Shown here in pieces: positions 13,601 through 28,446 of a DNA stretch of 64,000 bases (position 1 is the stretch's first letter; each line of letters starts with the position of its first letter). Both the position numbers and the translations under genes were made by a program. The notes under the pieces were generated by a model. The model was given only the letters and a program-made list of their open reading frames with translations. It did not search any database and was not told the DNA's origin. The stretch lies in the sequence record OR538032.1. The stretch is one strand, 5' to 3'.

Positions 13601-13843
13601 TGCGGTACTGCTCAAATGCAATTGCGCAGTCGATTTAGCGATTTGCAAATCGCCACTCATGACATCACCAGCACGTTTAACAACAGACTCGGTTAAATCT
13701 GTATGAGGGTCTGGCTTGTCATTTTCTGTATAAAGTTTGTAGCCATTGTAAAGTACTGTTTCTCCTTGCGGATCGAAACGCAAATTACCGCCATGCCAAA
13801 CTATGTTACCGCCAATCGCGGTTGTTGAACGTAATTCTGCCAT
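10643..13843 (-). CDS. 37: second long tail fibre distal subunit paralog with S74 chaperone
   Basis: identical N-terminus MAELRSTTAIGGNIVWHGGNLRFDPQGET, same repeats, YSDARVKTNV S74 domain. Confidence 0.85.
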   Translation of the reverse strand: MAELRSTTAIGGNIVWHGGNLRFDPQGETVLYNGYKLYTENDKPDPHTDLTESVVKRAGDVMSGDLQIAKSTAQLHLSSTANTDASLYLTEDNGNHGVRYHYDGDVNQWQIIRRESNSESVVMYGSRSNNNVVINGIGYLNTTQRIFADNYHPNADKWTTARTLTLSGEVTGSVSIDGSSNVTISTVVPNHTTYAEVGLSASNPEYIATGRTLSGVDTTVDWDTLYRGGFYNKLSQGLNRPVGFTGYWYAQTMTYGSTTNATQVAYPYGISGNSGTIALRTRYADVWEDWVYMYHTDYHPEADKWTTARTLTLSGDVSGSVSFDGSSNISLAVTVADDSHTHDGRYYTEAESDARFVNATGDTMTGYLNVPTTQAQSSNVVYGFGGTSAGKIGSMQLASGDIDDYQRSGFIDVNSSITGTPAEETGWMWGVHTEHNNGNGYAMTLAMGQNSNRLWWKRRESGVSSAWMKIFDDEYHPNADKWTTARTLTLNGDVSGSASIDGSSNVTLSVVVANDSHTHDGRYYTETEADARFAPIAGGGYVQKTGDTMSSSLFITDSVGNTAPASETVKVDKFGLIGNRSAVYLHNSNAAGEVVLGVGGILADNKQFSVKSTSITSTVNITAPTFIGALSGNASTATTWANARTLALSGDLSGSVSINGSSDVTLVATVINDSHTHNSISIQDTRAASVVPNDLPDRTVSAQFTNLDRPSGLPSWYSALTVKGWSDAYQVWQLISGSNTLSDNELYFRRGLSTSWESTQRIFMDDYHPNADKWTTARTLTLNGDVSGSASIDGSANVTLSVAVADDSHNHTHSDGSFTVNGTLISTGVSSYDKIRVWSSGSYTIGMASAQSFGWLNDYAMTFTMNNDTDRGFLWRDEGDAATDGAMSLTTGGNLMVKNVIALGGDTTRYMQNSANEGSWVFRSDNGKTWHFGARNTSWIHNSTDATSGFYYYQSIQSAGNITAYSDARVKTNVERITNPLEKIDRLNGYTYDRTDVECPRQTGVIAQEVLEVLPEAVVESGGDADGHYAVAYGNMVGLLIEGIKEEKRKREALEERIARLEALLS

Positions 13844-13907
13844 TAGTTTCATTCCATTTATTGAAATTTTTCATATGACAGTATTTATTATGCCGTAAAA
13901 AAGGGCG

Positions 13908-14482: not shown

Positions 14483-15919
14483 TTAAAAGCTGTAGCGATC
14501 AACGCCTACAGTTTTCAGCATGATCTTGACTGGCTCAAGCTCACCACCTAACAGTGAAGTCAGGATAGATGGGCTACAACCCGATACCAGTGCAGTACCC
14601 GCTTCGCCAGCTTTAACCGGAACGTTGCCAAGACGACCACGAATGTTCCAGAAGACTAGTTGTGGCATTTCATAGCCAGCACGTGCGTACATAGCTTTGA
14701 TTGCGTCGAAGTTTGCACGTTCGCCGCGACCGTACCAGCCACCACCAGTATTTGCTTGGTCGAATTCCATGTCGCTCATGATAAGCAACTTAGTTGGCAT
14801 TTCTTCTTGTGAAAGATTTGCACGTTTTGCACGTTCTAACAGAACGTTGAAGCACTTACCGATGTTTGTGCTCATGTCTTCGCCTGAGCGATTCATGTTG
14901 TCAAGACGCTCTTTTAGTGAGCTACCGCGCAACTGGTGGAAGTGCGGATCGCTTGAGAACGAAATGAACTGATCTTTGAAGATGCCTTCATTGCGTTCAG
15001 CAACATAGATGCCAAGAGACATTGCAACTTGCTTACAAGTCACACCCGAACGATCTGTACCTGCGTTGATTGGCGTGCTCATAGAGCCAGATACGTCAAC
15101 AACAGGGATGATGCGCTCATCAGAGCCTTCCATGTAGTTCGGCAGAGCTTTCCATTGCTCGTTCGCTACAGACGCATTGCCATGACTAACGCTCTTAACG
15201 ACATCATATGGGAACAATGCACCAGCGTTGATCTTCGCTTCACCTTTTTGAAGTGACTCGATGTAGCTTGTGTAACGAGCAGAAGCGTTACGACCGAATG
15301 CTTGTTGATAACGAGCAGACGCTACAGATGGCAACTTACCAAAGTCGATTGCATCCCATTCTTGAGCACACATCTTCTGTTCAACAGTGTCAGACAAAAG
15401 TGCTAGAATCTTACGCCACTGCTTCGCAGTTACACCAAGAGACTTGATTGTGCGCTTGAACACATGACCGTTTTTGCTGTTTTCACGTGGGAACCACTTA
15501 GCAGCAAGACCGTTCTTGTCGTTTACAATCGCGTTTGACCACAATGTGATCGCGTCTTTCTCAAGACTTGTACCGAACGCAGAAATCAAGTCGTCGAAAC
15601 GACCTAGTTCTGGAATTTTCGACATTACAGCACGAGCTACGTCAGGCTGCTCATTACAAAGTTTAGTGAATAGAGTACGGAAAGTACCACGTTCACCCGC
15701 ACCACCGCGAACATCACGAGACCATAAAAGAATGCGTGTCGCTAGTTCGGGGTTTTCTGCAAACGCACGACCGAACAGTGTTTTAGACTGATCGTTACCA
15801 CGCATAGCAGCAATACCGAAGAACAAGTTTAGACACTCGTTACCTGAAGTGCTGTGAGTAACTGCACCGTTTGCTGTACGTGAATCGTTTGATTGCATAG
15901 CGTTCATAAATGCTGACAT
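14483..15919 (-). CDS. DUF2828 protein (TROVE/Ro60-like helical domain plus vWA)
   Basis: TANGAVTHSTSG, RDVRGGAGER, LAAKWFPRE; vWA MIDAS DVSGS, SDMEFD, VFWNI. Confidence 0.85.
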   Translation of the reverse strand: MSAFMNAMQSNDSRTANGAVTHSTSGNECLNLFFGIAAMRGNDQSKTLFGRAFAENPELATRILLWSRDVRGGAGERGTFRTLFTKLCNEQPDVARAVMSKIPELGRFDDLISAFGTSLEKDAITLWSNAIVNDKNGLAAKWFPRENSKNGHVFKRTIKSLGVTAKQWRKILALLSDTVEQKMCAQEWDAIDFGKLPSVASARYQQAFGRNASARYTSYIESLQKGEAKINAGALFPYDVVKSVSHGNASVANEQWKALPNYMEGSDERIIPVVDVSGSMSTPINAGTDRSGVTCKQVAMSLGIYVAERNEGIFKDQFISFSSDPHFHQLRGSSLKERLDNMNRSGEDMSTNIGKCFNVLLERAKRANLSQEEMPTKLLIMSDMEFDQANTGGGWYGRGERANFDAIKAMYARAGYEMPQLVFWNIRGRLGNVPVKAGEAGTALVSGCSPSILTSLLGGELEPVKIMLKTVGVDRYSF

Positions 15920-19335: not shown

Positions 19336-19424
19336 TGGCGGAGATACTGGGAATCGAACCCAGAGAACGCTATTAACGTCCGACACCTTAGCAGGGTGCT
19401 GTCATACCTTTAGACCATATCTCC
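19336..19424 (-). tRNA. tRNA-Ser(GCT)
   Basis: cloverleaf, long variable arm, encoded CCA. Confidence 0.9.
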
Positions 19425-19429
19425 GTAGA

Positions 19430-19609
19430 TCATTTCTTACCACGCTCTGCTTTGCTAATCTCGACAGCAGCGATTTGCGCGTTGGCTTCTTTCTCAGTGT
19501 CATGAGTACCAAGTACTCGACCTTTAGATGAAAGAGCAACCCATTTGTCGCCACGCTTCTCGACTTTCTCAACAAGCTTGTGGTATTCATCAAACGTTTT
19601 AAGTTTCAT
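19430..19609 (-). CDS. 59-aa late protein MKLKTFDEYHKLVE..., putative internal head protein
   Basis: perfect TATAAATA at 19635-19642, GAGGGA RBS; translated by hand. Confidence 0.75.
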   Translation of the reverse strand: MKLKTFDEYHKLVEKVEKRGDKWVALSSKGRVLGTHDTEKEANAQIAAVEISKAERGKK

Positions 19610-19865
19610 TTGTCATCCCTCAGTTAGTTTATTGTATTTATAACTGAACGACTTTTAAACAGTGGCATGCTGCTCTCATGCTCAGACACATATTTGCTCT
19701 TATTGCAGGCGTGTGCCACGCGCAGCGCAGATCCCTTTTGATAATTTAATGACCAGCGGGACTCTTAGCAGGTCTTACACATAGCCTTTCAGCTATATCT
19801 TCTTTTAAGACCATAGTGTCGTACGGTCTAATCACTCTCTTTCGATTCGCGTTGCTAAGTGAATT

Positions 19866-19942
19866 TGGTGCCCAACCCGAGATTCGAACTCGGATCATCT
19901 AGTGTTTGAAACTAGCGCCTCTGCCAATTGGACTAGTTGGGC
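19866..19942 (-). tRNA. tRNA-Leu(CAA), short variable arm
   Basis: cloverleaf, CCA. Confidence 0.9.
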
Positions 19943-20057
19943 TTGAATGAGCTGCCGCAACTCTTTAATCCCTAACGCCTGTCAGCTTTCGCCCGGCTGA
20001 GACCGTTTTCAACGGCGGTAGTCTAGCTTCGTGTAGAACGCGGCTTATGCTAGAGTT

Positions 20058-20134
20058 TGGTACGCACGGGCGGATTCGAACCGCCATCCCTGAGATTTTA
20101 AGCCTCATGCCTCTGCCAATTGGACCACGTGCGC
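20058..20134 (-). tRNA. tRNA-Leu(TAA), short variable arm
   Basis: cloverleaf, CCA. Confidence 0.9.
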
Positions 20135-20136
20135 AG

Positions 20137-20210
20137 TGGAGCCCGAACAGAGAATCGAACTCTGACCGCGGGATTTGCAATCCCTCATACTTCCATTATA
20201 CGATTCGGGC
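20137..20210 (-). tRNA. tRNA-Cys(GCA)
   Basis: cloverleaf, U73, CCA. Confidence 0.9.
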
Positions 20211-20313
20211 AATTTGTTAGTGCATTGCATGGACTACTGGCGATCTTAATGGGTATCTCAAGCATTCAGAATTCCCATGCGCTACTACAATGCTTTTTTC
20301 GCTAAATGCACTT

Positions 20314-20390
20314 TGGGGTGACAGACGGGGATCGAACCCGCATCTTCCGGAATCACAACCCGGGGGTATTTCCACTTCACCCACTGCCAC
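20314..20390 (-). tRNA. tRNA-His(GTG)
   Basis: cloverleaf, C73, CCA. Confidence 0.9.
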
Positions 20391-20444
20391 ACCAAAGTAC
20401 ACTTTGGGATGTTTACGACATCAAACGAATGCGCTCCCTGTGCA

Positions 20445-20684
20445 TTAATCAGTTTTCTTTAAGTAGATACTATCAGGCGATAGCTCTCTCGTAAACATAT
20501 TTTTGAAATAAATTTCGATGTCATCAGAAGTTGTTGAAGACTCAATTTCAAGAGCACGTTCTAAAATCTTACCGCGTTTATAACCAGCGCGCCAACAGTC
20601 AAACATAAGTCTGTCCATGCGTTTCAGTTTTTCAATTTGGTTTTGATTTACGTATTCGTGAGTTTCAAGTAATACAGGCGTCAT
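20445..20684 (-). CDS. hypothetical protein in tRNA cluster
   Basis: 79-aa ORF filling the inter-tRNA gap. Confidence 0.6.
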   Translation of the reverse strand: MTPVLLETHEYVNQNQIEKLKRMDRLMFDCWRAGYKRGKILERALEIESSTTSDDIEIYFKNMFTRELSPDSIYLKKTD

Positions 20685-20707
20685 AATTTATTTCTCATCA
20701 TAAAGAA

Positions 20708-20781
20708 TGGTAGTCCCTAGTGGAATCGAGCCACTTCTTTCTCTGTGTAAAAGAGACGTACTGCCATTATACTAAGGGACC
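20708..20781 (-). tRNA. tRNA-Val(TAC)
   Basis: cloverleaf; C in place of T54. Confidence 0.85.
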
Positions 20782-20786
20782 AAAAT

Positions 20787-20860
20787 TGGAGCGGGTACAC
20801 GGACTCGAACCGAGACGAACGACTTGGAAGGACGTCATGCTACCATTACATCATACCCGC
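20787..20860 (-). tRNA. tRNA-Gly(TCC)
   Basis: cloverleaf, U73, CCA. Confidence 0.9.
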
Positions 20861-21047
20861 ATTGTTAATCTGAAGCGTCGAACAAATCACGTATTGCACG
20901 CAGATTCGTAAGCTCTACAGTAAGTGTTCTTATAAAGAACGGGTTGGTCTCTTTCGCGAGACGATTTTCAACACAGCGAATCTTATCGCGTATGTTGCCC
21001 TTGCTTAGTGTAAAGTAGTCATGCTTCTTATCCTCTTTGCTTGAATT

Positions 21048-21123
21048 TGGTGGAGACACCGATACTCGAAATCGGATCTAATGGCTTATGAGACCATTGC
21101 TCTACCACTTGAGCTACATCTCC
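21048..21123 (-). tRNA. tRNA-Met(CAT), elongator type
   Basis: cloverleaf, CCA. Confidence 0.85.
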
Positions 21124-21134
21124 AAAATCAGTAA

Positions 21135-21348
21135 TTAACTCATTTAATCGCACACGGGCTGACACCATATATTCATGGTCTGAGCGAGGAACCACATAGT
21201 GGGTACTGTCACCTCATCTTAGTTTTGATTGTTTTACATGACGATAACTAGAAACGTTCATAATAATGCCACGCGATACTTCCTGTATCACGGCTAACTG
21301 AGTTAGCAAACTTGCCTTGCGGCTGTAGTGTCGTTTCCGACGAATTAA
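21135..21348 (-). ncRNA. about 214-nt structured ncRNA with GNRA hairpins
   Basis: closing stem TTAATTCGT/ATGAGTTAA; GTCG-GAAA-CGAC, GCC-GCAA-GGC and other hairpins. Confidence 0.55.
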
Positions 21349-21349
21349 G

Positions 21350-21566
21350 TACAGACAATACCGAAGTGTTTTTCGTCTTTTGCATTAATCGGAGTTGACT
21401 AGCTTATTGATTCTCAACAAGCAAATATCGTCTGTTTCAGCGACGCGCCTATCTGACTATTTCTAGGCAGAGAGAATCTTTCCTTTCAAGCTGCGCCGAA
21501 GCACTGCCCAGGTTAAGATCATTACCATTTTTAAGTAATTTTCAATTGTTTGCTGTATATTGTCTC
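21350..21566 (-). ncRNA. about 215-nt structured ncRNA carrying the CWGCA motif (paralog 2)
   Basis: terminal stem AGACAATA/TATTGTCT; 3' block homologous to 19075-19325. Confidence 0.7.
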
Positions 21567-21626
21567 TCTACCATACTCATGATATGCCGAAGCAAAGTAT
21601 CATTCGCCGCATGATAGAGCTTAATT

Positions 21627-21702
21627 TGGCACGCCGTATGAGATTCGAACTCATAACCCCATCCTTAGAAGGGACGTGCTCTTCCAATTGAGCTAACAGC
21701 GC
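21627..21702 (-). tRNA. tRNA-Arg(TCT)
   Basis: cloverleaf, CCA. Confidence 0.9.
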
Positions 21703-21778
21703 ATTAAAAGAATTCGATCCATGAGCTATTGCGCAGACGATGGTAGTAAAGAGACTCTGCACTCATGTGATCGAAATT

Positions 21779-21853
21779 TGGTGGACACGCAGGGAGTCGA
21801 ACCCTATCTTCCTCATTGCAAGTGAGGCGCTTTCCCAATTAAGCTAACGGCCC
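21779..21853 (-). tRNA. tRNA-Ala(TGC)
   Basis: G3-U70, anticodon TGC; irregular acceptor stem. Confidence 0.8.
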
Positions 21854-21864
21854 AATGTTCGTTT

Positions 21865-22074
21865 TTACAACTGTGTGATTGAGATATGATCCCAGCCGTA
21901 TAAACCTTCAAGTTCTTCAATAGGCTCACAAACAATGTCAGAAATATATTCAGCAACTTTTGCTTCAATTTCTTCATCAGATAGCTTTTCATCAATTGCA
22001 AAAGCATCTTCATTATTGTTGCCACCGAAATAGCCACCAATGTCATATTCACACCATACTGAAATATAGTTCAT
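21865..22074 (-). CDS. acidic hypothetical protein (69 aa)
   Basis: GAGA RBS before ATG 22074. Confidence 0.6.
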   Translation of the reverse strand: MNYISVWCEYDIGGYFGGNNNEDAFAIDEKLSDEEIEAKVAEYISDIVCEPIEELEGLYGWDHISITQL

Positions 22075-22098
22075 GTTATTCTCACAGTTGTTTGAAAA

Positions 22099-22174
22099 TG
22101 GTGCCCTGACACGGATTTGAACCGCGAACCTGCTCATTACAAGTGAGCTGCACTGCCAATTGTGCTATCAGGGC
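22099..22174 (-). tRNA. tRNA-Thr(TGT)
   Basis: cloverleaf, CCA. Confidence 0.9.
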
Positions 22175-22180
22175 GTTACT

Positions 22181-22293
22181 GAGTGTTATTACTTGCGTCG
22201 TCCAGACCAGAGATACCAACTCTGAAAGGGAATCGAACCCCAAACATTTCTTTTCGTAAGAAGAATATTAGTAATTGTTTGCTGAAAACACTC
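22181..22293 (-). ncRNA. circularly permuted tRNA-like RNA (YrlA/Y-RNA-like architecture)
   Basis: terminal stems with bulged TTCAGCAAACA, internal T-arm GGGG-TTCGATT-CCC, loop-closed acceptor-like stem. Confidence 0.7.
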
Positions 22294-22302
22294 TTCGGTA
22301 TT

Positions 22303-22376
22303 TGGCAGGGGATAACGGATTCGAACCGGTACTGCGTGAGTCAAAGTCACGTATGCTGCCTTTACATCAATCCCCT
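22303..22376 (-). tRNA. tRNA-Gln(TTG)
   Basis: cloverleaf, G73, CCA. Confidence 0.9.
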
Positions 22377-22395
22377 ATTATTCTTAAATTATCTT

Positions 22396-22471
22396 TGGCG
22401 GAACCGACGGGTTTCGAACCCGCTACCTTCTCCGTGACAGGGAGACATGCAACCACTTACACCTCGGCTCC
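22396..22471 (-). tRNA. tRNA-Asp(GTC)
   Basis: cloverleaf, G73, CCA. Confidence 0.9.
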
Positions 22472-22694
22472 CCAAAGACAACTTAATAGTTGCTTTGTGC
22501 TCGTGCAAACCAAACACTAGCTGAACGACTTCTTGATTTCTTAGTTTTACTACACATTCCCTCGCTAAAGGGCATCATCGTTCTTGTTTTTAACAAATGC
22601 TATGAAAGTGAGATCTTGCTATGCAGGAGGTTTCAAATCTCTGCACACAAGCAGACATCGCAACCAACGCTCTCAAACATTGTCATGGTCAAAC

Positions 22695-22769
22695 TGGCGC
22701 TCCGTGTAGGACTCGAACCTACAGCCTTTCGGTTAACAGCCGATTGCTCCACCATTGAGCTAACGAAGC
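22695..22769 (-). tRNA. tRNA-Asn(GTT)
   Basis: cloverleaf, G73, CCA. Confidence 0.9.
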
Positions 22770-22772
22770 GTA

Positions 22773-23150
22773 TTATTTATTCGATGCGTGTTCTTCTCTG
22801 TGGCAATTCGCACATAACATGATGCATTTATCAAGCTCTGGGACAATTCTCTCCCATCGTTTGCAACCGCCACTAGCAATGCCAAAGTCTTTCCCATTCG
22901 GGTCTGTATGATGAAACTCTAATGCTTCAATGCACTTATCATACCCACATCGTTCACAGCAACCACCTTTATATTCAACCGCCCTCAATTTAGTACGGCG
23001 TCTATATGATACCACTGCTTCTTTATTCTTTTGTTTTCTCTCGTCATCTGTTCGAAATTTCAATTTCTTACCGTTGTATAAACCAGCACATCGACGACTA
23101 CAGAATTTATTGTTGTGTGTTTCTGCACCACACTCTAAGCATTTATTCAT
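22773..23150 (-). CDS. HNH endonuclease (homing-endonuclease-like)
   Basis: CLECG...FCSRRC zinc motif; CERCG...EFHH...LCANCHREEH. Confidence 0.85.
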   Translation of the reverse strand: MNKCLECGAETHNNKFCSRRCAGLYNGKKLKFRTDDERKQKNKEAVVSYRRRTKLRAVEYKGGCCERCGYDKCIEALEFHHTDPNGKDFGIASGGCKRWERIVPELDKCIMLCANCHREEHASNK

Positions 23151-23290
23151 CTGAATTACTCAATTAATAGTTAATAAAGTAACCCAAAGGAGAGTATAGC
23201 CCGCCACATTCGTAAGTGAATGACTCTATTACTACTTAGCAATTACATTCAAGCGTTACCAAGAACCATGCCACGTAGCTTTAAATTAAA

Positions 23291-23349
23291 CAGCAATCCT
23301 TTTCTCTTTTTCCAAATAAAAGTTTTGTATTGTTTGCTGAAAGATTGCT
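23291..23349 (-). ncRNA. short hairpin RNA carrying the CWGCA motif
   Basis: AGCAATCTTT/AAGGATTGCT stem, CAGCAAACAAT bulge. Confidence 0.55.
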
Positions 23350-23355
23350 TAATTC

Positions 23356-23429
23356 TGGCAGGGACATAGAGATTCGAACTCTAACGAACGGGTTTGGAAT
23401 CCGTCATGCTGCCGTTACATCATGTCCCT
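23356..23429 (-). tRNA. tRNA-Trp(CCA)
   Basis: cloverleaf, G73, CCA. Confidence 0.9.
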
Positions 23430-23435
23430 AAAATT

Positions 23436-23509
23436 TGGTAGCCCCAGACAGACTCGAACTGTCAACGTGCGATTATCGGTCGCGTGTTTTACCGTTAAAC
23501 TATGGAGCT
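23436..23509 (-). tRNA. tRNA-Ile(GAT)
   Basis: cloverleaf; C at position 33. Confidence 0.85.
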
Positions 23510-23573
23510 AAAGTGAGCACATTTCAGTGCTCGTGTTAATCGGTTAAGTGACTAAACTTCCCGGTTAACTAAT

Positions 23574-23672
23574 TGGCGGAAGACTAGGGATTCGAACCCT
23601 AACATCACCTCCCGGTGACCGACGGTTTTCAAGACCGTTGCCGCTACCCAGAATCTTTCGGCTAAGCCTTCC
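23574..23672 (-). tRNA. tRNA-Ser(TGA), enlarged D-loop
   Basis: long variable arm, G73, CCA; 99 nt. Confidence 0.85.
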
Positions 23673-23679
23673 ATTAATT

Positions 23680-23756
23680 TGGTTGCGTGGGGCTGGATTC
23701 GAACCAGCGTTCTCCGGCTTATGAGACCGACGAGATGACCACTTCTCTACCCCGCA
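23680..23756 (-). tRNA. tRNA-Met(CAT), initiator-like
   Basis: TGCGGGG acceptor with bulge, fMet-like D arm, CAT anticodon. Confidence 0.75.
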
Positions 23757-23764
23757 ATTATTCA

Positions 23765-23853
23765 ACAGCTTGCGTTCTTTGGTCTGTTTATCGCTGTCTG
23801 AACTGAGTTCGCCGAGCGATCAATAGATTAAGTTAAATTGCAGTATGCAAGCT
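23765..23853 (-). ncRNA. about 87-nt RNA carrying the CWGCA motif
   Basis: AGCTTGC/GCAAGCT stem followed by ATACTGCAA; inner ATCGCT/AGCGAT stem. Confidence 0.6.
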
Positions 23854-23858
23854 AAATT

Positions 23859-23944
23859 TGGTGGAGCGTAGAGGAATCGAACCTCTCTTCCCATTACGGG
23901 ACACGGATTTACAGTCCGCTGCGCCACCTTGGCGCATACGCTCC
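23859..23944 (-). tRNA. tRNA-Tyr(GTA)
   Basis: long variable arm, CCA. Confidence 0.9.
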
Positions 23945-23950
23945 GGAATT

Positions 23951-24024
23951 TGGTACTCGATACGGGAGTCGAACCCGTCCTACTTCCTTGAAAGGGAAGT
24001 GACCTACCGATAGTCGAATCGAGC
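23951..24024 (-). tRNA. tRNA-Glu(TTC)
   Basis: cloverleaf, CCA. Confidence 0.9.
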
Positions 24025-24087
24025 ATTAAATTGTATATTGATTTGCAAGCTAATCAACTCGCAAAGCGATACACAATGTATCTAATT

Positions 24088-24164
24088 TGGTACGCCGCCC
24101 TGGACTCGAACCAGACACCTGAGAGTTAAAAGCTCCCTGCTCTTCCATGATGAGCTACCGACGC
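24088..24164 (-). tRNA. tRNA-Lys(TTT)
   Basis: cloverleaf, CCA. Confidence 0.9.
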
Positions 24165-24175
24165 ATTATAAAATC

Positions 24176-24250
24176 TGGTGGGTCGCAAGAGATTCGAACT
24201 CTCACCGTTCTGGTTAAAAGCCAGATGTACTACCGTTATACGAACGACCC
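24176..24250 (-). tRNA. tRNA-Lys(TTT), second divergent copy
   Basis: cloverleaf, CCA. Confidence 0.9.
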
Positions 24251-24256
24251 AGAATG

Positions 24257-24331
24257 TGGTGCACCCCCTCGGAATCGAACCGAGCACTGCGGGACTTCAA
24301 TCCGCCGCTTTTCCTGATAAGCTAAGGGTGC
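24257..24331 (-). tRNA. tRNA-Phe(GAA)
   Basis: cloverleaf, CCA. Confidence 0.9.
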
Positions 24332-24341
24332 ATGGTACGCA

Positions 24342-24418
24342 TGGTACGCATGAAGAGATTCGAACTCTTAACTTCTGGCTTCTAAGACCAGTGCCTCTGC
24401 CAATTGGGCTACATGCGC
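24342..24418 (-). tRNA. tRNA-Leu(TAG), short variable arm
   Basis: cloverleaf, CCA. Confidence 0.9.
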
Positions 24419-24454
24419 ATTATTCGTTTTTGAACGTTACTTCGTTCTTCTTCA

Positions 24455-24650
24455 TTGTACATGATGTTTATATCGTTGTAAACATCGTTTTTGAAAAATT
24501 TTCATTCAGTTTTGAATGAGATTTCGCTTTTCTCTATTGTACATGATGTTTTCGTCATTGTAAACATCTTTCTGAATTTATTTTGAAGAACTTAACGTTT
24601 TCATTTTTCTATGTGTTAATCTTAACACTCGCTCAAGACATCTTAAACAC
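24455..24650 (-). promoter_or_regulatory. three tandem early promoters driving the downstream tRNA block
   Basis: two near-duplicate TTTACA-N17-TACAAT and one TTTAAG-N17-TAAGAT. Confidence 0.7.
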
Positions 24651-24728
24651 TAATTTGTGAAAAAGTTCGTTAAATTCTATCATCACGACAGTACTTAACG
24701 AGATACGGTCCTAAGCGTATCATATCAA

Positions 24729-24856
24729 TTCAGAATGGTGAGACTTGAACTCACTTCGAGTAATAGCGTAAACTAACAGTTGTTGCCAGAGGCTATCAAT
24801 TATTCTCTACCGAGTATGTTGCAACTCTGCATTTCCCCATTTCTAGGCATTCTGAA
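24729..24856 (-). ncRNA. 128-nt RNA with tRNA-like acceptor and T-arm and expanded interior
   Basis: TTCAGAATG/CATTCTGAA stem; GTGAG-TTCAAGT-CTCAC; no CCA. Confidence 0.6.
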
Positions 24857-24859
24857 ATA

Positions 24860-24935
24860 TGGCACCCAATACAAGATTCGAACTTGTAACCTTCGCCTTC
24901 GTAGGGCGCTGCTCTTCCAATTGAGCTAATCGGGC
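24860..24935 (-). tRNA. tRNA-Arg(ACG)
   Basis: cloverleaf, CCA. Confidence 0.9.
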
Positions 24936-24943
24936 ATTAAAAC

Positions 24944-25020
24944 TGGTCCGTGACAAGCGATTCGAACGCTTAACTTCTCCGCCCCAAACGGAGTACTCTA
25001 CCAGATTGAGCTAGTCACGG
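24944..25020 (-). tRNA. tRNA-Pro(TGG)
   Basis: C1-G72, G37, CCA. Confidence 0.9.
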
Positions 25021-25029
25021 ATTTTAAAT

Positions 25030-25103
25030 TGGTCGGGACGAAGAGACTCGAACTCTTACCACATGCTCCCAAAGCATGAACGCTGCCTTTACGCCACGTC
25101 CCG
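25030..25103 (-). tRNA. tRNA-Pro(TGG), second divergent copy
   Basis: C1-G72, CCA. Confidence 0.9.
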
Positions 25104-25471
25104 TTTGTTCTTTAACTTTGTTTATCATACTCTGCTTTCAAAGTACGTTAAACAAAATTTTTTGATTTCCTTCGCCCATAAAAAAGGACGCTACGTGCGT
25201 CCTCAAGTATACTTCTATGTTATACTATTGGACTACGTTTGTGGAGACCACTCTTGTTTCGCACACGGATTCGCTAGATACACGAATTCTGAGCGCAGAA
25301 AATCGCTGCGTAAAATCATATCAGAATGTGTATTCGAATGTGTCATGGAAACTCTCTAAACGTTAAAAATAAAAATGTTTTTGTTTGTATAATAGTACTT
25401 ATAACACCAAATTTGACGATTTGCGGTATTTTCGCAGAAAATTGAAAAAAATTCAACTTTCTGCGATTTTC

Positions 25472-25705
25472 TTATCGACCTAGGTGTTTTCGCTTGTTCA
25501 TTTCAACGAGAATTTCATCGTTGTAATGGCGGTTCAGTTCAACATACTTCTTGTGTTGTTCTGAAGTCAACTCGTTAGTGTCATTCAGATGCTTCAAGAA
25601 CCCAAGAGGCTTGCGAAACGACTTGCGATATTCGTTCAGACGCTCGTCCGTTAGATTATGCAGTTGTTTCGGAGTCAGTAACGTTTTATTGATGTCAAAA
25701 CTCAT
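25472..25705 (-). CDS. hypothetical protein
   Basis: GAGG RBS before ATG 25705. Confidence 0.65.
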   Translation of the reverse strand: MSFDINKTLLTPKQLHNLTDERLNEYRKSFRKPLGFLKHLNDTNELTSEQHKKYVELNRHYNDEILVEMNKRKHLGR

Positions 25706-25729
25706 GTTGTACCTCACTTGTTATTAAAA

Positions 25730-25845
25730 TGGTAGTCGGGGCTGGATTCGAACCAGCGACCACGTGCTTAACAGGCAATTGAAGGAGTGCTGGAGCGATA
25801 CTTGTCAGTATCATTCTTCGTGCTCTACCACTGAGCTACCCGACT
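25730..25845 (-). ncRNA. tRNA-Asn(GTT) scaffold with 41-nt motif insertion in the anticodon stem
   Basis: deleting 25778-25818 gives a regular 75-nt cloverleaf with CCA. Confidence 0.8.
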
Positions 25846-25850
25846 ATGAA

Positions 25851-26372
25851 TTATTTAACTTTGAACTTCAAATTACGCCAGTCAAAGTTTCGTTTGTTCT
25901 TTGTGTTGTAGAACGTGCCCCAATCAATAGCAATCGGACAGTTCTTACTACCTACACGAGCGATAAATACATCGTGAGTCTCGCTGTAACGCTCTCTAAG
26001 CTCCTTTAAACGCTTATCGTAGTTAGCGATATACTCAGCACACGCTTTGTTGTAAGCTGCTTTAGAGAAGCGTTCGTTACTCGAAAATACATTACCTAGA
26101 TAAGGTCGAATAACACGAACTCGTTCTTTAGACCAACCCATACTAAAGCTGTTTTCAATCTCACCTGAGATTTCACCAGTCTTCTTACATCTAGCAAGAA
26201 TGACCCAGCAACGTTCACGCCGAAAATCTTTTCGTACATACACGTTAACGTGCTTGTCAATGTACTCTTGATAACGAGCGTTATACTCAGCACGCAGTTT
26301 ATTGCGCACTTCAGGCGACATTGCAGCTCGTTCTTCTTTCGAAAACGCTTGTGCAAATTTCAATGGTTTCAT
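25851..26372 (-). CDS. basic hypothetical protein (173 aa)
   Basis: GAGGA RBS before ATG 26372. Confidence 0.7.
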   Translation of the reverse strand: MKPLKFAQAFSKEERAAMSPEVRNKLRAEYNARYQEYIDKHVNVYVRKDFRRERCWVILARCKKTGEISGEIENSFSMGWSKERVRVIRPYLGNVFSSNERFSKAAYNKACAEYIANYDKRLKELRERYSETHDVFIARVGSKNCPIAIDWGTFYNTKNKRNFDWRNLKFKVK

Positions 26373-26385
26373 TATAATTTCCTCT

Positions 26386-26625
26386 TGGCGCCGCTCGTGT
26401 GAATCGAACACACGTCAAACACAACACCTCGTCCACCCAATTAGAGTTTCGAAGTAAGAGCTAATCAGCATTTCGGAGCAATCGAGCGTTATTTCTACGA
26501 GTGAGCTTTCGACAACTCACACGCACTTTCTACTCGGTCCCAGTGATTCGGTACCAACGCAGGTTGCGAACCTACGTCTGCACTAATGTTGGGAAAACAC
26601 TGCGTATTGTACACCAGTTAGCGGC
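26386..26625 (-). ncRNA. 240-nt RNA with a tmRNA-like tRNA-like domain
   Basis: GCCGCT/AGCGGC acceptor, G73-CCA, GAC-GTGTG-TTCGATT-CACAC, P2-like ACAATAC/GTGTTGT. Confidence 0.7.
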
Positions 26626-26628
26626 ATT

Positions 26629-26859
26629 TTAAAGATAGCTATCAAAGACAGCATCATCAACTTCTTCAATATTGATGTCAGCGTAACATTCGTTCGCAAT
26701 TGCTTGAATCTCACCTATTGAAACTGTACCTGAGTACAAAACAACAGCATCATTCGGAATCACGACATCACACATGTATTTGTTAAACATTGCAGTTCTG
26801 AAATCAGAATCAACAGAGTAACCGTGCAACGACGTGATAACTAGCAATTTATGTGACAT
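26629..26859 (-). CDS. hypothetical protein
   Basis: GAGGA RBS; promoter TTGACA-N17-TAGTAT at 26890-26918. Confidence 0.7.
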   Translation of the reverse strand: MSHKLLVITSLHGYSVDSDFRTAMFNKYMCDVVIPNDAVVLYSGTVSIGEIQAIANECYADINIEEVDDAVFDSYL

Positions 26860-26938
26860 AATGTTTTCCTCGTGTAGTTGATAATGTGTATACTACACGT
26901 TGATGAAACGCATGTCAACAACTTTTTCAAATTATTTT

Positions 26939-27015
26939 TGGTAGCCCCTCTCGGATTCGAACCGAGAACCTGACGATTATGAGTCGTCTGCTACTACCGT
27001 TACAGCTAAGGGGCT
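26939..27015 (-). tRNA. tRNA-Ile2(CAT, lysidine type) or tRNA-Met
   Basis: AGCCCCT acceptor and GACGA-CTCATAA-TCGTC arm resemble ileX. Confidence 0.8.
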
Positions 27016-27395: not shown

Positions 27396-27517
27396 TGGTG
27401 GAGAGTACGGGATTCGAACCACGTGACCAAAAGATTTACCTAGTTAGGGTTTGCAGCATGAATGCTTATCAGAATTCTTTAACATTCTTTTGCTCTACCA
27501 GACTGAGCTAACTCTCC
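27396..27517 (-). ncRNA. tRNA-scaffolded RNA A (motif module in place of anticodon loop)
   Basis: GGAGAGT/ACTCTCC-ACCA, D arm, T arm, about 50-nt insert. Confidence 0.75.
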
Positions 27518-27523
27518 AGAATT

Positions 27524-27641
27524 TGAGGGTGAAGTACAGGACTCGAACCTGCGACCTCCGGCGTGCATAAAATGCAGCATGAAATCTTAACAGACTTCTA
27601 TTGTTTAGACCGGCATTCTAACCAACTGAACTAACTTCACC
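27524..27641 (-). ncRNA. tRNA-Asp-like scaffolded RNA B
   Basis: GTTCAGTTGGTTAGAATGCCGG...CACGCCGGAGGTCGCAGGTTCGAGTCC with insert in the anticodon loop. Confidence 0.75.
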
Positions 27642-27649
27642 ATAAAAAC

Positions 27650-27782
27650 ATATTGAGCAGGGTGCAGGACTCGAACCTGCGTCACGATCTTGAAATGATA
27701 TGCGAATTGATTGCAGAATACAAACTTAACAGCTTGCGTTTATGCTACGTGTGCTAGCCACTACACCAACCCTGCTCAATAT
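27650..27782 (-). ncRNA. tRNA-scaffolded RNA C with 14-bp terminal stem
   Basis: ATATTGAGCAGGGT inverted repeat, D and T arms, motif insert. Confidence 0.75.
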
Positions 27783-28032
27783 GTTCTTGGGCGTGCTTAC
27801 GCAGATCGATTCTTCACTACGTAAGCACAAAATCCTCTAGTTTATATTTGCCTTAGCTAATCACAACACAATCTGGAATCGTGCGCTTTAATTACGGGAT
27901 GAATGACCCGTTCGCATGTGATTAGCGTAGAACAGCTACGCACCGTTTCTTCTTCAATGTCCAAGGCAAAGAGGACTATGAATACTAGTGCGAGAAGATA
28001 TACAATCAAATTGCTCACCTCGCTTAATAAGT

Positions 28033-28179
28033 GAGAGTACATTGGTCGAGTGTAACGGAATCGAACCGTTCCCACGATCTCCCTATGATATGCGTAAATT
28101 GGTTGCTGAATATAATCATGTCTGATTACAGTATGCTACGTGTGCTGCCACTACACCAACACTCGACCAATGTACTCTC
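28033..28179 (-). ncRNA. tRNA-scaffolded RNA D with 21-bp terminal stem, paralog of C
   Basis: GAGAGTACATTGGTCGAGTGT perfect inverted repeat, D and T arms, motif insert. Confidence 0.75.
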
Positions 28180-28180
28180 G

Positions 28181-28332
28181 ATATTTTAAATGTGCGCTAC
28201 TTGCACGCCGACTGAGCGAATTTTAACTCAGCTAGTTTTTGATTGAGACCTCGTCCGCTAAGACTATTCCCTACACGCCAGAACTTATACTGGCTCTATG
28301 TATTCATTGCGGCTAACGCACATTTAAAATAT
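28181..28332 (-). ncRNA. about 150-nt structured RNA with 16-bp terminal stem
   Basis: ATATTTTAAATGTGCG perfect inverted repeat plus two internal hairpins. Confidence 0.55.
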
Positions 28333-28334
28333 TA

Positions 28335-28438
28335 CTCATCTTCAGCGAAGAGACAGAAACGATGAGTCTAGTCTGTTTAATCAATGTTGTTCATCTTCAA
28401 GAAGAGGCGAGAACGATGAACTTAGCTCGCTTAATCAA
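28335..28438 (-). repeat. two 55-nt-period repeats, each a predicted H-type pseudoknot
   Basis: compensatory changes ACAGA/TCTGT vs GCGAG/CTCGC and CTCATC/GATGAG vs TTCATC/GATGAA. Confidence 0.75.
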
Positions 28439-28446
28439 CTGTGTTA

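What the first reader, a model, noticed from the sequence alone, without database searches (positions are those of the whole stretch)
25730..25845. Regular tRNA-Asn scaffold interrupted by a 41-nt motif cassette inside the anticodon stem
Deleting 25778-25818 gives a clean 75-nt cloverleaf with anticodon GUU and CCA (discriminator A rather than the usual G). The insert AAGAA-TGATAC-TGACAA-GTATCG-CTC-CAGCA-CTCCTTCAAT is the motif hairpin. A canonical tRNA-Asn also exists at 22695. The motif therefore behaves as a portable module grafted onto tRNA: either a protein tether on an intact tRNA body or an unusual excisable intron.
Basis: seen in the sequence. Interest (0 to 1): 0.8.

Follow-up and report, generated by a model that had tools for sequence, protein, structure and literature searches.

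The report
tRNA-shaped partner RNA for phage Ro60-like protein
The "interrupted tRNA-Asn" is real, and it is one of five tRNA-shaped RNAs in this Vibrio phage carrying a conserved hairpin-plus-CNGCA cassette that, across hundreds of phages and prophages, sits beside a Ro60-like RNA-binding protein gene, so it is most likely a new kind of Y-RNA-like partner rather than a broken or intron-bearing tRNA.

Summary
Removing 25778-25818 from 25730-25845 gives a clean 75-nt tRNA-Asn(GUU).

The window is a KVP40-type Vibrio phage. KVP40's GenBank record calls this gene "tRNA-Pseudo-3".

It is not a pseudogene. It is 97-100% identical in relatives whose flanks are 77-85% identical. A distant ortholog has changed 5 of 7 acceptor pairs, all by compensation.

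The cassette is a 6-bp hairpin with a GNNN tetraloop, followed by an invariant C-N-G-C-A. It recurs in four more tRNA-like genes in the window (B-E, 27398-28165) and in more than 200 distinct tRNA-like genes from other phage contigs and bacterial assemblies.

About half of a dereplicated set of these keep an anticodon-like hairpin. The rest have none, which argues against an intron.

These RNA genes lie next to, and always on the same strand as, a ~480-aa DUF2828/DUF7788 protein gene (window 14486-15919). Its predicted fold best matches Ro60/Rsr.

Best reading: a Y-RNA-like RNA in native tRNA topology, with the cassette as the Ro60-like protein's docking site. Binding, processing and biological role are inferred, not shown. 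I found no paper in the held library that makes this link.

The parts
25730..25845 (-). RNA A: tRNA-Asn-like scaffold carrying the cassette (116 nt including encoded CCA); corresponds to KVP40 tRNA-Pseudo-3
   Evidence: Rfam tRNA 49.8 bits. Family model R1 88.1 bits, against at most 41 bits for ordinary tRNAs. KVP40 annotation.
25819..25845 (-). 5' tRNA part: acceptor 5' strand, D arm, and the first two nucleotides (CG) of the anticodon stem
   Evidence: Sequence; cloverleaf after deletion.
25778..25818 (-). 41-nt cassette inserted between the 2nd and 3rd nucleotide of the anticodon-stem 5' strand
   Evidence: Deleting it gives tRNA-Asn(gtt). The insert sits after stem nucleotide 2 or 3 in 43 of 55 members that can be 'spliced' in silico.
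25797..25812 (-). Cassette hairpin: 6 bp (GAUACU/AGUAUC) with a GACA tetraloop
   Evidence: All 6 pairs covary across 93 sequences; 86% of cells are paired on an alignment not fitted to the structure. 100 distinct stem sequences.
25788..25792 (-). Invariant C-N-G-C-A (here CAGCA) 3' of the hairpin
   Evidence: C, G, C and A are invariant in 93 of 93 diverse members.
25763..25777 (-). Distal anticodon hairpin (UGC / CUGUUAA / GCA) plus CG, which closes the proximal two pairs; anticodon GUU at 25770-25772
   Evidence: The same loop is kept in the distant lineages L002, L012, L013, L035 and L071.
25730..25762 (-). Variable loop, T arm, acceptor 3' strand, discriminator A, CCA
   Evidence: Acceptor and T stems show compensatory changes in the 6E35.1a/D482 orthologs.
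27527..27640 (-). RNA B (KVP40 tRNA-Pseudo-5): tRNA-like, cassette replaces the anticodon loop, no CCA
   Evidence: R1 70.8 bits; Rfam tRNA 52.4 bits with a 44-nt insert.
27398..27517 (-). RNA C (KVP40 tRNA-Pseudo-4): tRNA-like, cassette in the anticodon loop, CCA encoded
   Evidence: R1 72.1 bits; Rfam tRNA 51.9 bits.
27655..27775 (-). RNA D: tRNA-like with a 9-bp terminal stem and the cassette; not annotated in KVP40
   Evidence: R1 74.9 bits; sequence.
28045..28165 (-). RNA E: paralog of D with a 10-15-bp terminal stem and the cassette
   Evidence: R1 59.9 bits; sequence.
14483..15919 (-). Gene for the 478-aa Ro60-like protein (DUF2828 + DUF7788; ortholog of KVP40.0300 'RNA-binding protein'), proposed protein partner
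   Evidence: Pfam; phrog_850. AF2 model pLDDT 73. Top Foldseek PDB hits are 9kop, 9l5y and 2nvo, i.e. Ro60/Rsr, E 1.5e-8 to 8e-6. Linkage statistics.

Best explanation
RNA A is a functional, selectively maintained non-coding RNA. It is neither a dead tRNA nor an intron-bearing one. It belongs to a widespread family of phage and prophage RNAs that keep the native tRNA fold (acceptor, D and T arms, often a distal anticodon-like hairpin). These RNAs carry a side module in the anticodon arm: a short hairpin with a GNNN tetraloop followed by single-stranded C-N-G-C-A. The family is genetically coupled to a Ro60-like (HEAT-repeat ring plus vWA/MIDAS) protein gene. By analogy with Ro60/Rsr and its Y RNAs, the most likely mechanism has three steps. 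First, the RNA is transcribed with the tRNA cluster and matured by tRNA-processing enzymes through its tRNA body. Second, the Ro60-like protein docks on the cassette. Third, the tRNA-shaped remainder acts as gate or tether, bringing the ring together with tRNA-recognising or RNA-degrading and repair factors during infection. Shown here: conservation, structure by covariation, family breadth, gene linkage, and fold similarity of the protein. Inferred: physical binding, the cassette as the binding determinant, and the downstream role (RNA quality control, tRNA repair, or counter-defence).
For: (1) Purifying selection. A is 97.4-100% identical in relatives whose flanks are 77-85% identical. The 6E35.1a/D482 ortholog changes 5 of 7 acceptor pairs, all compensatorily, and keeps the cassette. 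(2) The cassette recurs in 5 genes in the window: R1 scores 60-88 bits against at most 41 bits for ordinary tRNAs. (3) An IMG/VR pattern scan found at least 114 loci. 196 of 223 distinct long tRNA-like genes carry hairpin+CNGCA. (4) Covariation on 93 diverse sequences: 94.9% of cells paired against 62.3% in shuffles, 0 of 500 shuffles as high, and all 6 cassette-hairpin pairs show double-sided changes. (5) The only protein family enriched near these RNAs is DUF2828/DUF7788, present in 75 of 115 loci. All 83 RNA-protein pairs are on the same strand, mostly 50-1000 nt apart. (6) Reverse test starting from the protein. Module-bearing RNAs occur in 42 of 80 viral loci (95 hits, all on the protein strand) and in 49 of 80 bacterial-genome loci (114 hits, all on the protein strand, mostly directly upstream in arrays of 2-5). 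(7) The window encodes the ortholog at 14486-15919 on the same strand. Its model matches phage phiLo Ro60 and D. radiodurans Rsr over the full length, and it has a DVSGS MIDAS-like motif. (8) Precedent. Y RNAs with tRNA-like domains are encoded next to Ro60 in bacteria and phages (PMC4201824). Two Y-like RNAs sit upstream of phage phiLo Ro60 and bind it (PMC12135203).
Against: No binding or expression data exist. In the window the protein gene lies 10-12 kb from the RNAs rather than adjacent. Homology of the protein to Ro60 rests on a medium-confidence model (pLDDT 73, TM about 0.48). The sequence profile does not reach Ro60 (E=1.3), and Pfam TROVE is not hit. The cassette does not resemble the bulged-helix Ro60 site of known Y RNAs. 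About 40% of protein-anchored loci showed no RNA within 2.5 kb. Two RNA-anchored loci (L115, L132) have more than 3.8 kb of flank on both sides without the gene. The perfectly kept Asn anticodon loop of A is not explained by docking alone.
Confidence: 0.62

Rival explanations
1. Excisable intron. A is a pre-tRNA-Asn whose 41-nt insert is cut out and the halves rejoined, for example by a nuclease plus phage RNA ligase or repair enzymes, to give a decoding tRNA-Asn. The Ro60-like protein might assist or be unrelated.
For: Deletion gives a perfect cloverleaf with GUU and CCA. 55 of 106 dereplicated members can be 'spliced' in silico to a 5-bp stem plus 7-nt loop with U33 and R37, against 1.7% in shuffles, and the insertion site is fixed. 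Anticodon-like loops of Asn, Thr, Lys, Ile, Arg and Ser type recur.
Against: 51 of 106 members, including B-E in the window, have no anticodon loop at all yet keep the cassette under selection. Many 'loops' are not anticodon-like, e.g. AUNGGGA. The invariant nucleotides are internal and not at the junctions. The insert is too short for group I and no ribozyme family matches. By inspection there is no bulge-helix-bulge at the junctions. No insert-free allele was seen in the 30 related phages that hold most of the query. A canonical tRNA-Asn is already present.
Confidence: 0.12
2. Stand-alone tRNA mimic or decoy. The RNAs sponge or mislead host tRNA-targeting factors (anticodon nucleases, modification enzymes) through their anticodon-like hairpins, independently of the Ro60-like protein.
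For: The distal loops and cassette loops look like anticodon loops. Among the clearly tRNA-like loops, NNU anticodons (ANN decoders such as Asn, Lys and Thr) predominate. My own knowledge, not tested here: such tRNAs are common targets of anticodon nucleases.
Against: This does not explain the strict same-strand linkage to the Ro60-like gene. It does not explain the invariant CNGCA. The two central loop positions of the cassette hairpin vary freely among orthologs: GACA, GUCA, GAUA.
Confidence: 0.1
3. Decaying pseudo-tRNA hit by a small selfish insertion (the existing 'tRNA-Pseudo' annotation), with no function.
For: KVP40 annotation as tRNA-OTHER/pseudo. ARAGORN and tRNAscan-type tools fail or assign inconsistent identities (Val, Ile) in different records.
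Against: Near-perfect conservation against diverged flanks. Compensatory changes. Family-wide conservation and gene linkage.
Confidence: 0.03
4. Unspliced decoding tRNA with an extra arm, used on the ribosome as it is.
For: Intact acceptor, T and D arms, anticodon loop and CCA.
Against: Established knowledge, not tested here: the anticodon stem is closely contacted in the ribosomal A and P sites, so a 41-nt branch at stem nucleotides 28/29 should clash. Paralogs without anticodons share the cassette.
Confidence: 0.03

Closest known systems
Bacterial and phage Y RNAs of the YrlA type with Ro60/Rsr (Rfam RF02553; Chen et al. 2014, PMC4201824; phage phiLo Yrl1/Yrl2, PMC12135203)
   Same: Small RNAs with a tRNA-like domain, encoded in one or several copies next to and on the same strand as a ring-shaped HEAT+vWA protein gene. 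Found in phages as well as bacteria.
   Different: The connectivity here is that of a true tRNA: 5' and 3' ends in the acceptor stem, module in the anticodon arm. YrlA is circularly permuted, with its ends in a long Ro-binding stem. The conserved element is hairpin+CNGCA, not a bulged helix or CGAA loop. The Rfam YrlA model gives only 31 bits (gathering score 69), and that match straddles two genes. The protein is DUF2828/DUF7788, not Pfam TROVE.
D. radiodurans Yrn1 Y RNA
   Same: As described in PMC4201824, it has some tRNA-like features, including an 'anticodon arm' with a 5-bp stem and a 6-nt rather than 7-nt loop. This is reminiscent of the cassette hairpin, which can also be read as a 6-nt loop (UGNNAA).
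   Different: Yrn1 lacks a full D arm, and its partner is a canonical TROVE Rsr.
Canonical tRNA / tRNA-Asn(GUU)
   Same: All tRNA core elements, the GUU anticodon loop and CCA are present. The Rfam tRNA model scores above its gathering threshold.
   Different: A 41-nt structured cassette interrupts the anticodon stem. The canonical phage tRNA-Asn is a different gene (22695-22769).
T4 stable RNAs species 1 and 2 (rnaC, rnaD)
   Same: Small stable RNAs of unknown function in the syntenic tRNA region of a T4-type phage.
   Different: The family model gives 14.8 bits for rnaC and nothing for rnaD. No cassette is present, and as far as I know T4 lacks the Ro60-like gene (not checked here).
tRNA introns (bacterial group I in anticodon loops; archaeal bulge-helix-bulge; 'enigmatic' Lak megaphage tRNA introns, PMC6784885)
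   Same: An intervening sequence in a tRNA gene whose removal restores a cloverleaf.
   Different: The 41-55 nt length is too short for group I. The insert is in the stem, not the loop. No bulge-helix-bulge is seen. Half the family has nothing to restore. The one Lak intron whose size I saw in the held supplement is about 93 nt, and ACAGCAA does not occur in the held (truncated) intron table.

Membership tests
tRNA (RF00005) | Scores above the Rfam gathering threshold with a cloverleaf | tested here: met
   49.8 bits against a gathering score of 29, but only with a 54-nt gap in the anticodon arm.
tRNA (RF00005) | Contiguous 5-bp anticodon stem and 7-nt loop in the gene | tested here: not met
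   ARAGORN finds nothing unless the 41 nt are deleted.
tRNA (RF00005) | Aminoacylation and use in decoding | not testable with these tools
   Needs charging and polysome assays.
Y RNA / YrlA (RF02553) | Encoded close to, and co-oriented with, a Ro60-type protein gene | tested here: met
   83 of 83, 95 of 95 and 114 of 114 RNA hits are on the protein strand. In the window it is the same strand, 10-12 kb away.
Y RNA / YrlA (RF02553) | Contains a tRNA-like domain (D and T arms, acceptor-like stem) | tested here: met
Y RNA / YrlA (RF02553) | 5' and 3' ends pair in a long stem that carries the Ro60 site (permuted tRNA-like module) | tested here: not met
   The ends form a 7-bp acceptor stem and the conserved module is internal.
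Y RNA / YrlA (RF02553) | Reaches the Rfam YrlA gathering score | tested here: not met
   31 bits against 69; the match spans the 3' half of B plus the 5' half of C.
Y RNA / YrlA (RF02553) | Physically bound by the Ro60 ortholog | not testable with these tools
   Needs RIP, CLIP or EMSA.
Ro60 / Rsr (TROVE + vWA) protein | HEAT-repeat ring followed by a vWA domain with MIDAS | tested here: met
   The AF2 model is helical at the N-terminus and alpha/beta at the C-terminus, and carries DVSGS. The top four Foldseek hits are Ro60/Rsr over the full length, probability 1.0, TM 0.39-0.48. This is a medium-confidence model.
Ro60 / Rsr (TROVE + vWA) protein | Sequence-level match to TROVE (Pfam) or to solved Ro60 structures | tested here: not met
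   Pfam gives DUF2828 + DUF7788 only. A profile search against PDB sequences gives E=1.3 to phiLo Ro60.
Group I tRNA intron | Catalytic core of about 200 nt or more, inserted in the anticodon loop | tested here: not met
   41 nt, in the stem; no Rfam intron or ribozyme match at E<=1.
Archaeal-type tRNA intron | Bulge-helix-bulge at the two junctions | tested here: not met
   By inspection only: the junction nucleotides are flanked by the 2-bp and 3-bp stem segments, with no 3-4-3 motif. No dedicated search was run.
T4 rnaC/rnaD stable RNAs | Sequence and structure similarity to the T4 species 1 and 2 RNAs | tested here: not met
   R1 gives 14.8 bits for rnaC and nothing for rnaD.

The most novel reading that the evidence does not exclude
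The Ro60-like ring plus its set of tRNA-shaped RNAs is a phage and prophage system aimed at tRNA-level conflict. In this reading the RNAs present authentic-looking anticodon arms, mostly of ANN-decoding types such as Asn, Lys and Thr, as bait or template. The ring docked on the cassette would then capture, shield, degrade or help repair tRNAs attacked by host anticodon nucleases. A variant reading is that A-type members are latent tRNAs released on demand. Either would be a new RNP-based counter-defence mechanism and a new use of the tRNA fold.
Probability: 0.17. Interest if true: 0.88.

Novelty: new variant of a known kind. Interest (0 to 1): 0.7.

Why it matters
It would explain a class of "pseudo", "intron-containing" or inconsistently named tRNA genes that has been in phage annotations since KVP40 (2003). 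It would give the large DUF2828/DUF7788 protein family an RNA partner: at least 556 relatives in IMG/VR and 226 in bacterial genome assemblies. It would extend the Ro60/Y-RNA paradigm to a second, unpermuted tRNA architecture with a distinct recognition element. It also supplies a defined, testable RNA-protein pair in a culturable T4-type phage. Practically, the covariance model separates these RNAs from real tRNAs, which matters for counting phage tRNA repertoires.

Tried and rejected
- **Rfam families.** A scan at E<=1 found only tRNA, apart from a weak YrlA match that straddles B and C. No ribozyme, riboswitch or tmRNA was found.
- **Mini-tmRNA idea.** GCA could be a resume codon followed by a short ORF. 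This works by eye only for RNA C and its orthologs, not for A or B or for other lineages, and none has G3:U70.
- **CNGCA pairing with a T-stem or D-stem strand.** I found suggestive matches in A and B by eye, but they are not kept in C or across lineages.
- **A P1 helix closing the insert.** It is present in some members (A weakly, L026, 6E35) but not in general.
- **T4 rnaC/rnaD as relatives.** Rejected.
- **Lak megaphage tRNA introns.** These appear different: about 93 nt for the one I saw, and the motif is absent from the held, truncated table.
- **Other co-occurring ORF clusters.** Clusters 1-3 are antisense ORFs inside the Ro60-like gene, so they are spurious.
- **Sequence search of the protein against PDB.** It gave only designed armadillo repeats, or E=1.3 to Ro60; only fold comparison connects them.
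- **Single-sequence MFE folding of A, B and C.** Uninformative, z -1.2 to -2.9.
- **Promoter and terminator scan.** Not above background.
- **The KVP40 genome paper (PMC180978) and the Sim et al. review (PMC10870794).** Neither could be read.

Full report
**What is there.** The window is a KVP40-type T4-like Vibrio phage, 100% identical to PG216 and 97% to KVP40 over the test stretch. It carries a minus-strand tRNA cluster of 27 ARAGORN tRNAs.

The finding lies on the minus strand. The Rfam tRNA model matches 25733-25845 at 49.8 bits, but with a 54-nt gap in the anticodon arm. ARAGORN finds nothing there. Once the 41 nt at 25778-25818 are removed, it calls a clean 75-nt tRNA-Asn(gtt) with ACCA.

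The canonical tRNA-Asn at 22695-22769 is a different gene, about 47/75 identical in a rough ungapped comparison. KVP40's GenBank record already lists this locus as "tRNA-Pseudo-3". Other records call it tRNA-Val, tRNA-Ile, or nothing. What was open is what the gene is.

**Not a pseudogene.**
- The 116-nt gene is 97.4-100% identical in VH7D, ValKK3, nt-1, VS1 and QD01, while 400 nt of flank on each side are only 77-85% identical.
- In the more distant Vibrio phages 6E35.1a and D482, the acceptor stem differs at 5 of 7 pairs, all compensated.
- In D482 a T-stem pair is also compensated.
- The cassette is retained there with a U-G wobble in its hairpin and a different tetraloop.
- No insert-free allele appeared among the 30 related phages that hold most of the query.

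**The cassette is a shared module.** Rfam tRNA also matched two other over-long genes, B (27528-27640) and C (27399-27517). Reading upstream showed two more, D and E.

All five carry the same elements: a short hairpin, 1-4 nt, then C-N-G-C-A. In A this is GAUACU-GACA-AGUAUC, then GCU-C, then CAGCA.

Two IMG/VR pattern scans showed this is general.
- One scan fixed the tRNA-Asn exons and left the insert free. It found the same insertion site in unrelated contigs.
- The other asked for D arm ... CWGCAA ... T loop.

Across all loci gathered, 196 of 223 distinct long tRNA-like genes have hairpin+CNGCA, with 100 different stem sequences and mostly GNNN tetraloops closed by U-A or U-G.

In a MAFFT alignment of 93 dereplicated members, C, G, C and A of the motif are invariant. 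RNAalifold recovers acceptor, D, cassette-hairpin and T helices, and 21 of 22 pairs show compensatory changes. Overall, 94.9% of cells are paired against 62.3% in column shuffles and about 38-46% when partners are slid. The cassette hairpin alone is 86% paired with double-sided changes at all six pairs.

A covariance model built from this alignment scores A-E at 60-88 bits and every ordinary tRNA of the window at 41 bits or less.

**Intron or payload?** For 55 of 106 dereplicated members, ignoring the insert gives a 5-bp stem and a 7-nt loop with U33 and R37, against 1.7% in shuffles. In 43 of those 55 the insert sits after the 2nd or 3rd nucleotide of the 5' strand. The architecture is therefore a side branch on an otherwise continuous anticodon arm.

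Against an intron:
- 51 of 106 members, including B-E, have no such loop.
- Many loops that do exist are not anticodon-like (AUNGGGA).
- The invariant residues are inside the insert, not at its junctions.
- The size and the Rfam scans exclude known ribozymes.

The module is thus the conserved payload and the tRNA body is its carrier.

**The partner.** I clustered all ORFs from 115 loci. The only broadly shared family is a ~490-aa protein found in 75 loci, with Pfam domains DUF2828 + DUF7788. The next clusters are antisense artefacts inside that same gene.

Linkage holds from both directions.
- **From the RNA.** In all 83 RNA-protein pairs the RNA is on the protein's strand, usually 50-1000 nt away. 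Of 74 RNA-anchored loci, 54 contain the gene. Of the 20 that lack it, only two have more than 3.8 kb of flank on both sides.
- **From the protein, viral contigs.** Starting from the protein (at least 556 relatives in IMG/VR), the RNA model finds 95 members in 42 of 80 loci, all on the protein strand. Many of these have D arms that the earlier DNA pattern could not have selected.
- **From the protein, bacterial assemblies.** In bacterial genome assemblies, mostly Clostridia MAGs and possibly prophages, it finds 114 members in 49 of 80 loci. All are on the protein strand, mostly in arrays of 2-5 directly upstream of the gene.

The window has the ortholog at 14486-15919 on the minus strand, 36-45% identical to the others. 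This is KVP40.0300, annotated "RNA-binding protein", and phrog_850.

Its AlphaFold model (pLDDT 73, pTM 0.72) is an N-terminal helical repeat followed by an alpha/beta domain bearing DVSGS. The four best PDB matches, all over the full length, are:
- the TROVE crystal structure 9kop;
- two chains of the cryo-EM structure 9l5y of Thermus phage phiLo Ro60;
- D. radiodurans Rsr (2nvo).

E-values run from 1.5e-8 to 8e-6. After these come only isolated vWA domains. Sequence methods do not reach Ro60, so the relationship is remote and rests on fold.

**Mechanism proposed.** Ro60/Rsr proteins bind Y RNAs encoded next to them. [quoted passage not shown] Phage phiLo Ro60 binds two upstream Y-like RNAs and can assemble with host PNPase (PMC12135203). 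Iyer et al. noted TROVE proteins "with a tRNA-like partner" in some jumbo phages (PMC7824862).

On that precedent, A-E would be the RNA subunits of a Ro60-like RNP, with the cassette as docking site and the tRNA body as maturation signal and tether. I give this 0.62 overall. By part: family membership and function as an RNA about 0.95; partnership with the protein about 0.75; the cassette as the binding determinant about 0.6; any particular downstream role 0.3 or less.

**What this model does not explain.** It does not account for why A-type members keep such good anticodon arms, most often Asn GUU and otherwise mainly other NNU anticodons. That leaves room for a bait or latent-tRNA role.

**Comparison and novelty.** The system works like Ro60/Y RNA but is not a member of YrlA. 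The topology is unpermuted, the conserved element differs, and the Rfam YrlA model fails: 31 against 69 bits, on a match that fuses two genes. T4 rnaC and rnaD are not relatives.

Searches of the held literature for DUF2828, KVP40 with Ro60/TROVE, phage tRNA introns and tRNA mimics found no description of this RNA class or of its link to the protein. Two key papers could not be read, so prior mention cannot be excluded. I rate it a new variant of a known kind.

Noticed in passing
window 27398-28165 (-): Four further cassette-bearing tRNA-like genes lie upstream of the finding: C 27398-27517, B 27527-27640, D 27655-27775, E 28045-28165. D and E are not annotated in KVP40, are not hit by Rfam tRNA, have 9-15-bp terminal stems, and share a long conserved 3' segment (…CGCAUAUCAU…AGAUCGUG).
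   Followed up: yes
window 14483-15919 (-): Ro60-like (DUF2828+DUF7788) gene just beyond the tRNA cluster, next to a gp37-like tail-fibre gene (10646-13852).
   Followed up: yes
window 21782-21853 (-): An ordinary-length tRNA-like gene that ARAGORN misses (Rfam tRNA 44.9 bits). It corresponds by position to KVP40 tRNA-Pseudo-1. The family model gives it only 15.5 bits, so it is not a cassette RNA.
   Followed up: partly
window 19336-27015 (-): The 27-tRNA cluster has no tRNA-Ala. It has three CAU tRNAs, and two each of Pro(UGG) and Lys(UUU).
   Followed up: no
window ~28330-28440 (-): Two tandem copies of about 58 nt, each with a UUCAUC…GAUGAA-type hairpin, lie just upstream of E. Rfam gives only a weak partial tmRNA-like match (28333-28434, 15 bits). 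Unexplained.
   Followed up: no
L008 ~800-870 and L009 ~1230-1335 (ValKK3, VH1_2019): Some relatives carry another structured element near B or in its place. It has a 9-bp terminal stem, a T-arm-like AAGGUUCGAAUCCUU, and a hairpin whose loop contains CCUGACAAG. It may be a permuted relative of the family.
   Followed up: no
L011 9679-9805(-) and 9495-9620(-) (359-kb IMG/VR contig): A tRNA-Asn(GUU) gene and an apparent tRNA-Val(UAC) gene are interrupted at the same stem position by a different ~55-nt insert (shared …UCG(A/U)UUUC…GAAA(U/A)UGGUUAUC, no CNGCA). This is a second insert type at the same site.
   Followed up: partly
family-wide: Where the distal hairpin looks like a real anticodon loop, anticodons ending in U (ANN decoders: Asn GUU most often, then Thr, Lys, Ile, Arg UCU/CCU, Ser GCU) account for about 29 of 55. 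A few members have 8-nt loops (e.g. L065 CUGGUUAA).
   Followed up: partly
L004, L007 (nt-1, QD01) versus L005 (VS1): B and C are variably present: nt-1 and QD01 have D-B but no C, VS1 has D-C but no B, and KVP40-type phages have both. This suggests partial redundancy among paralogs.
   Followed up: partly
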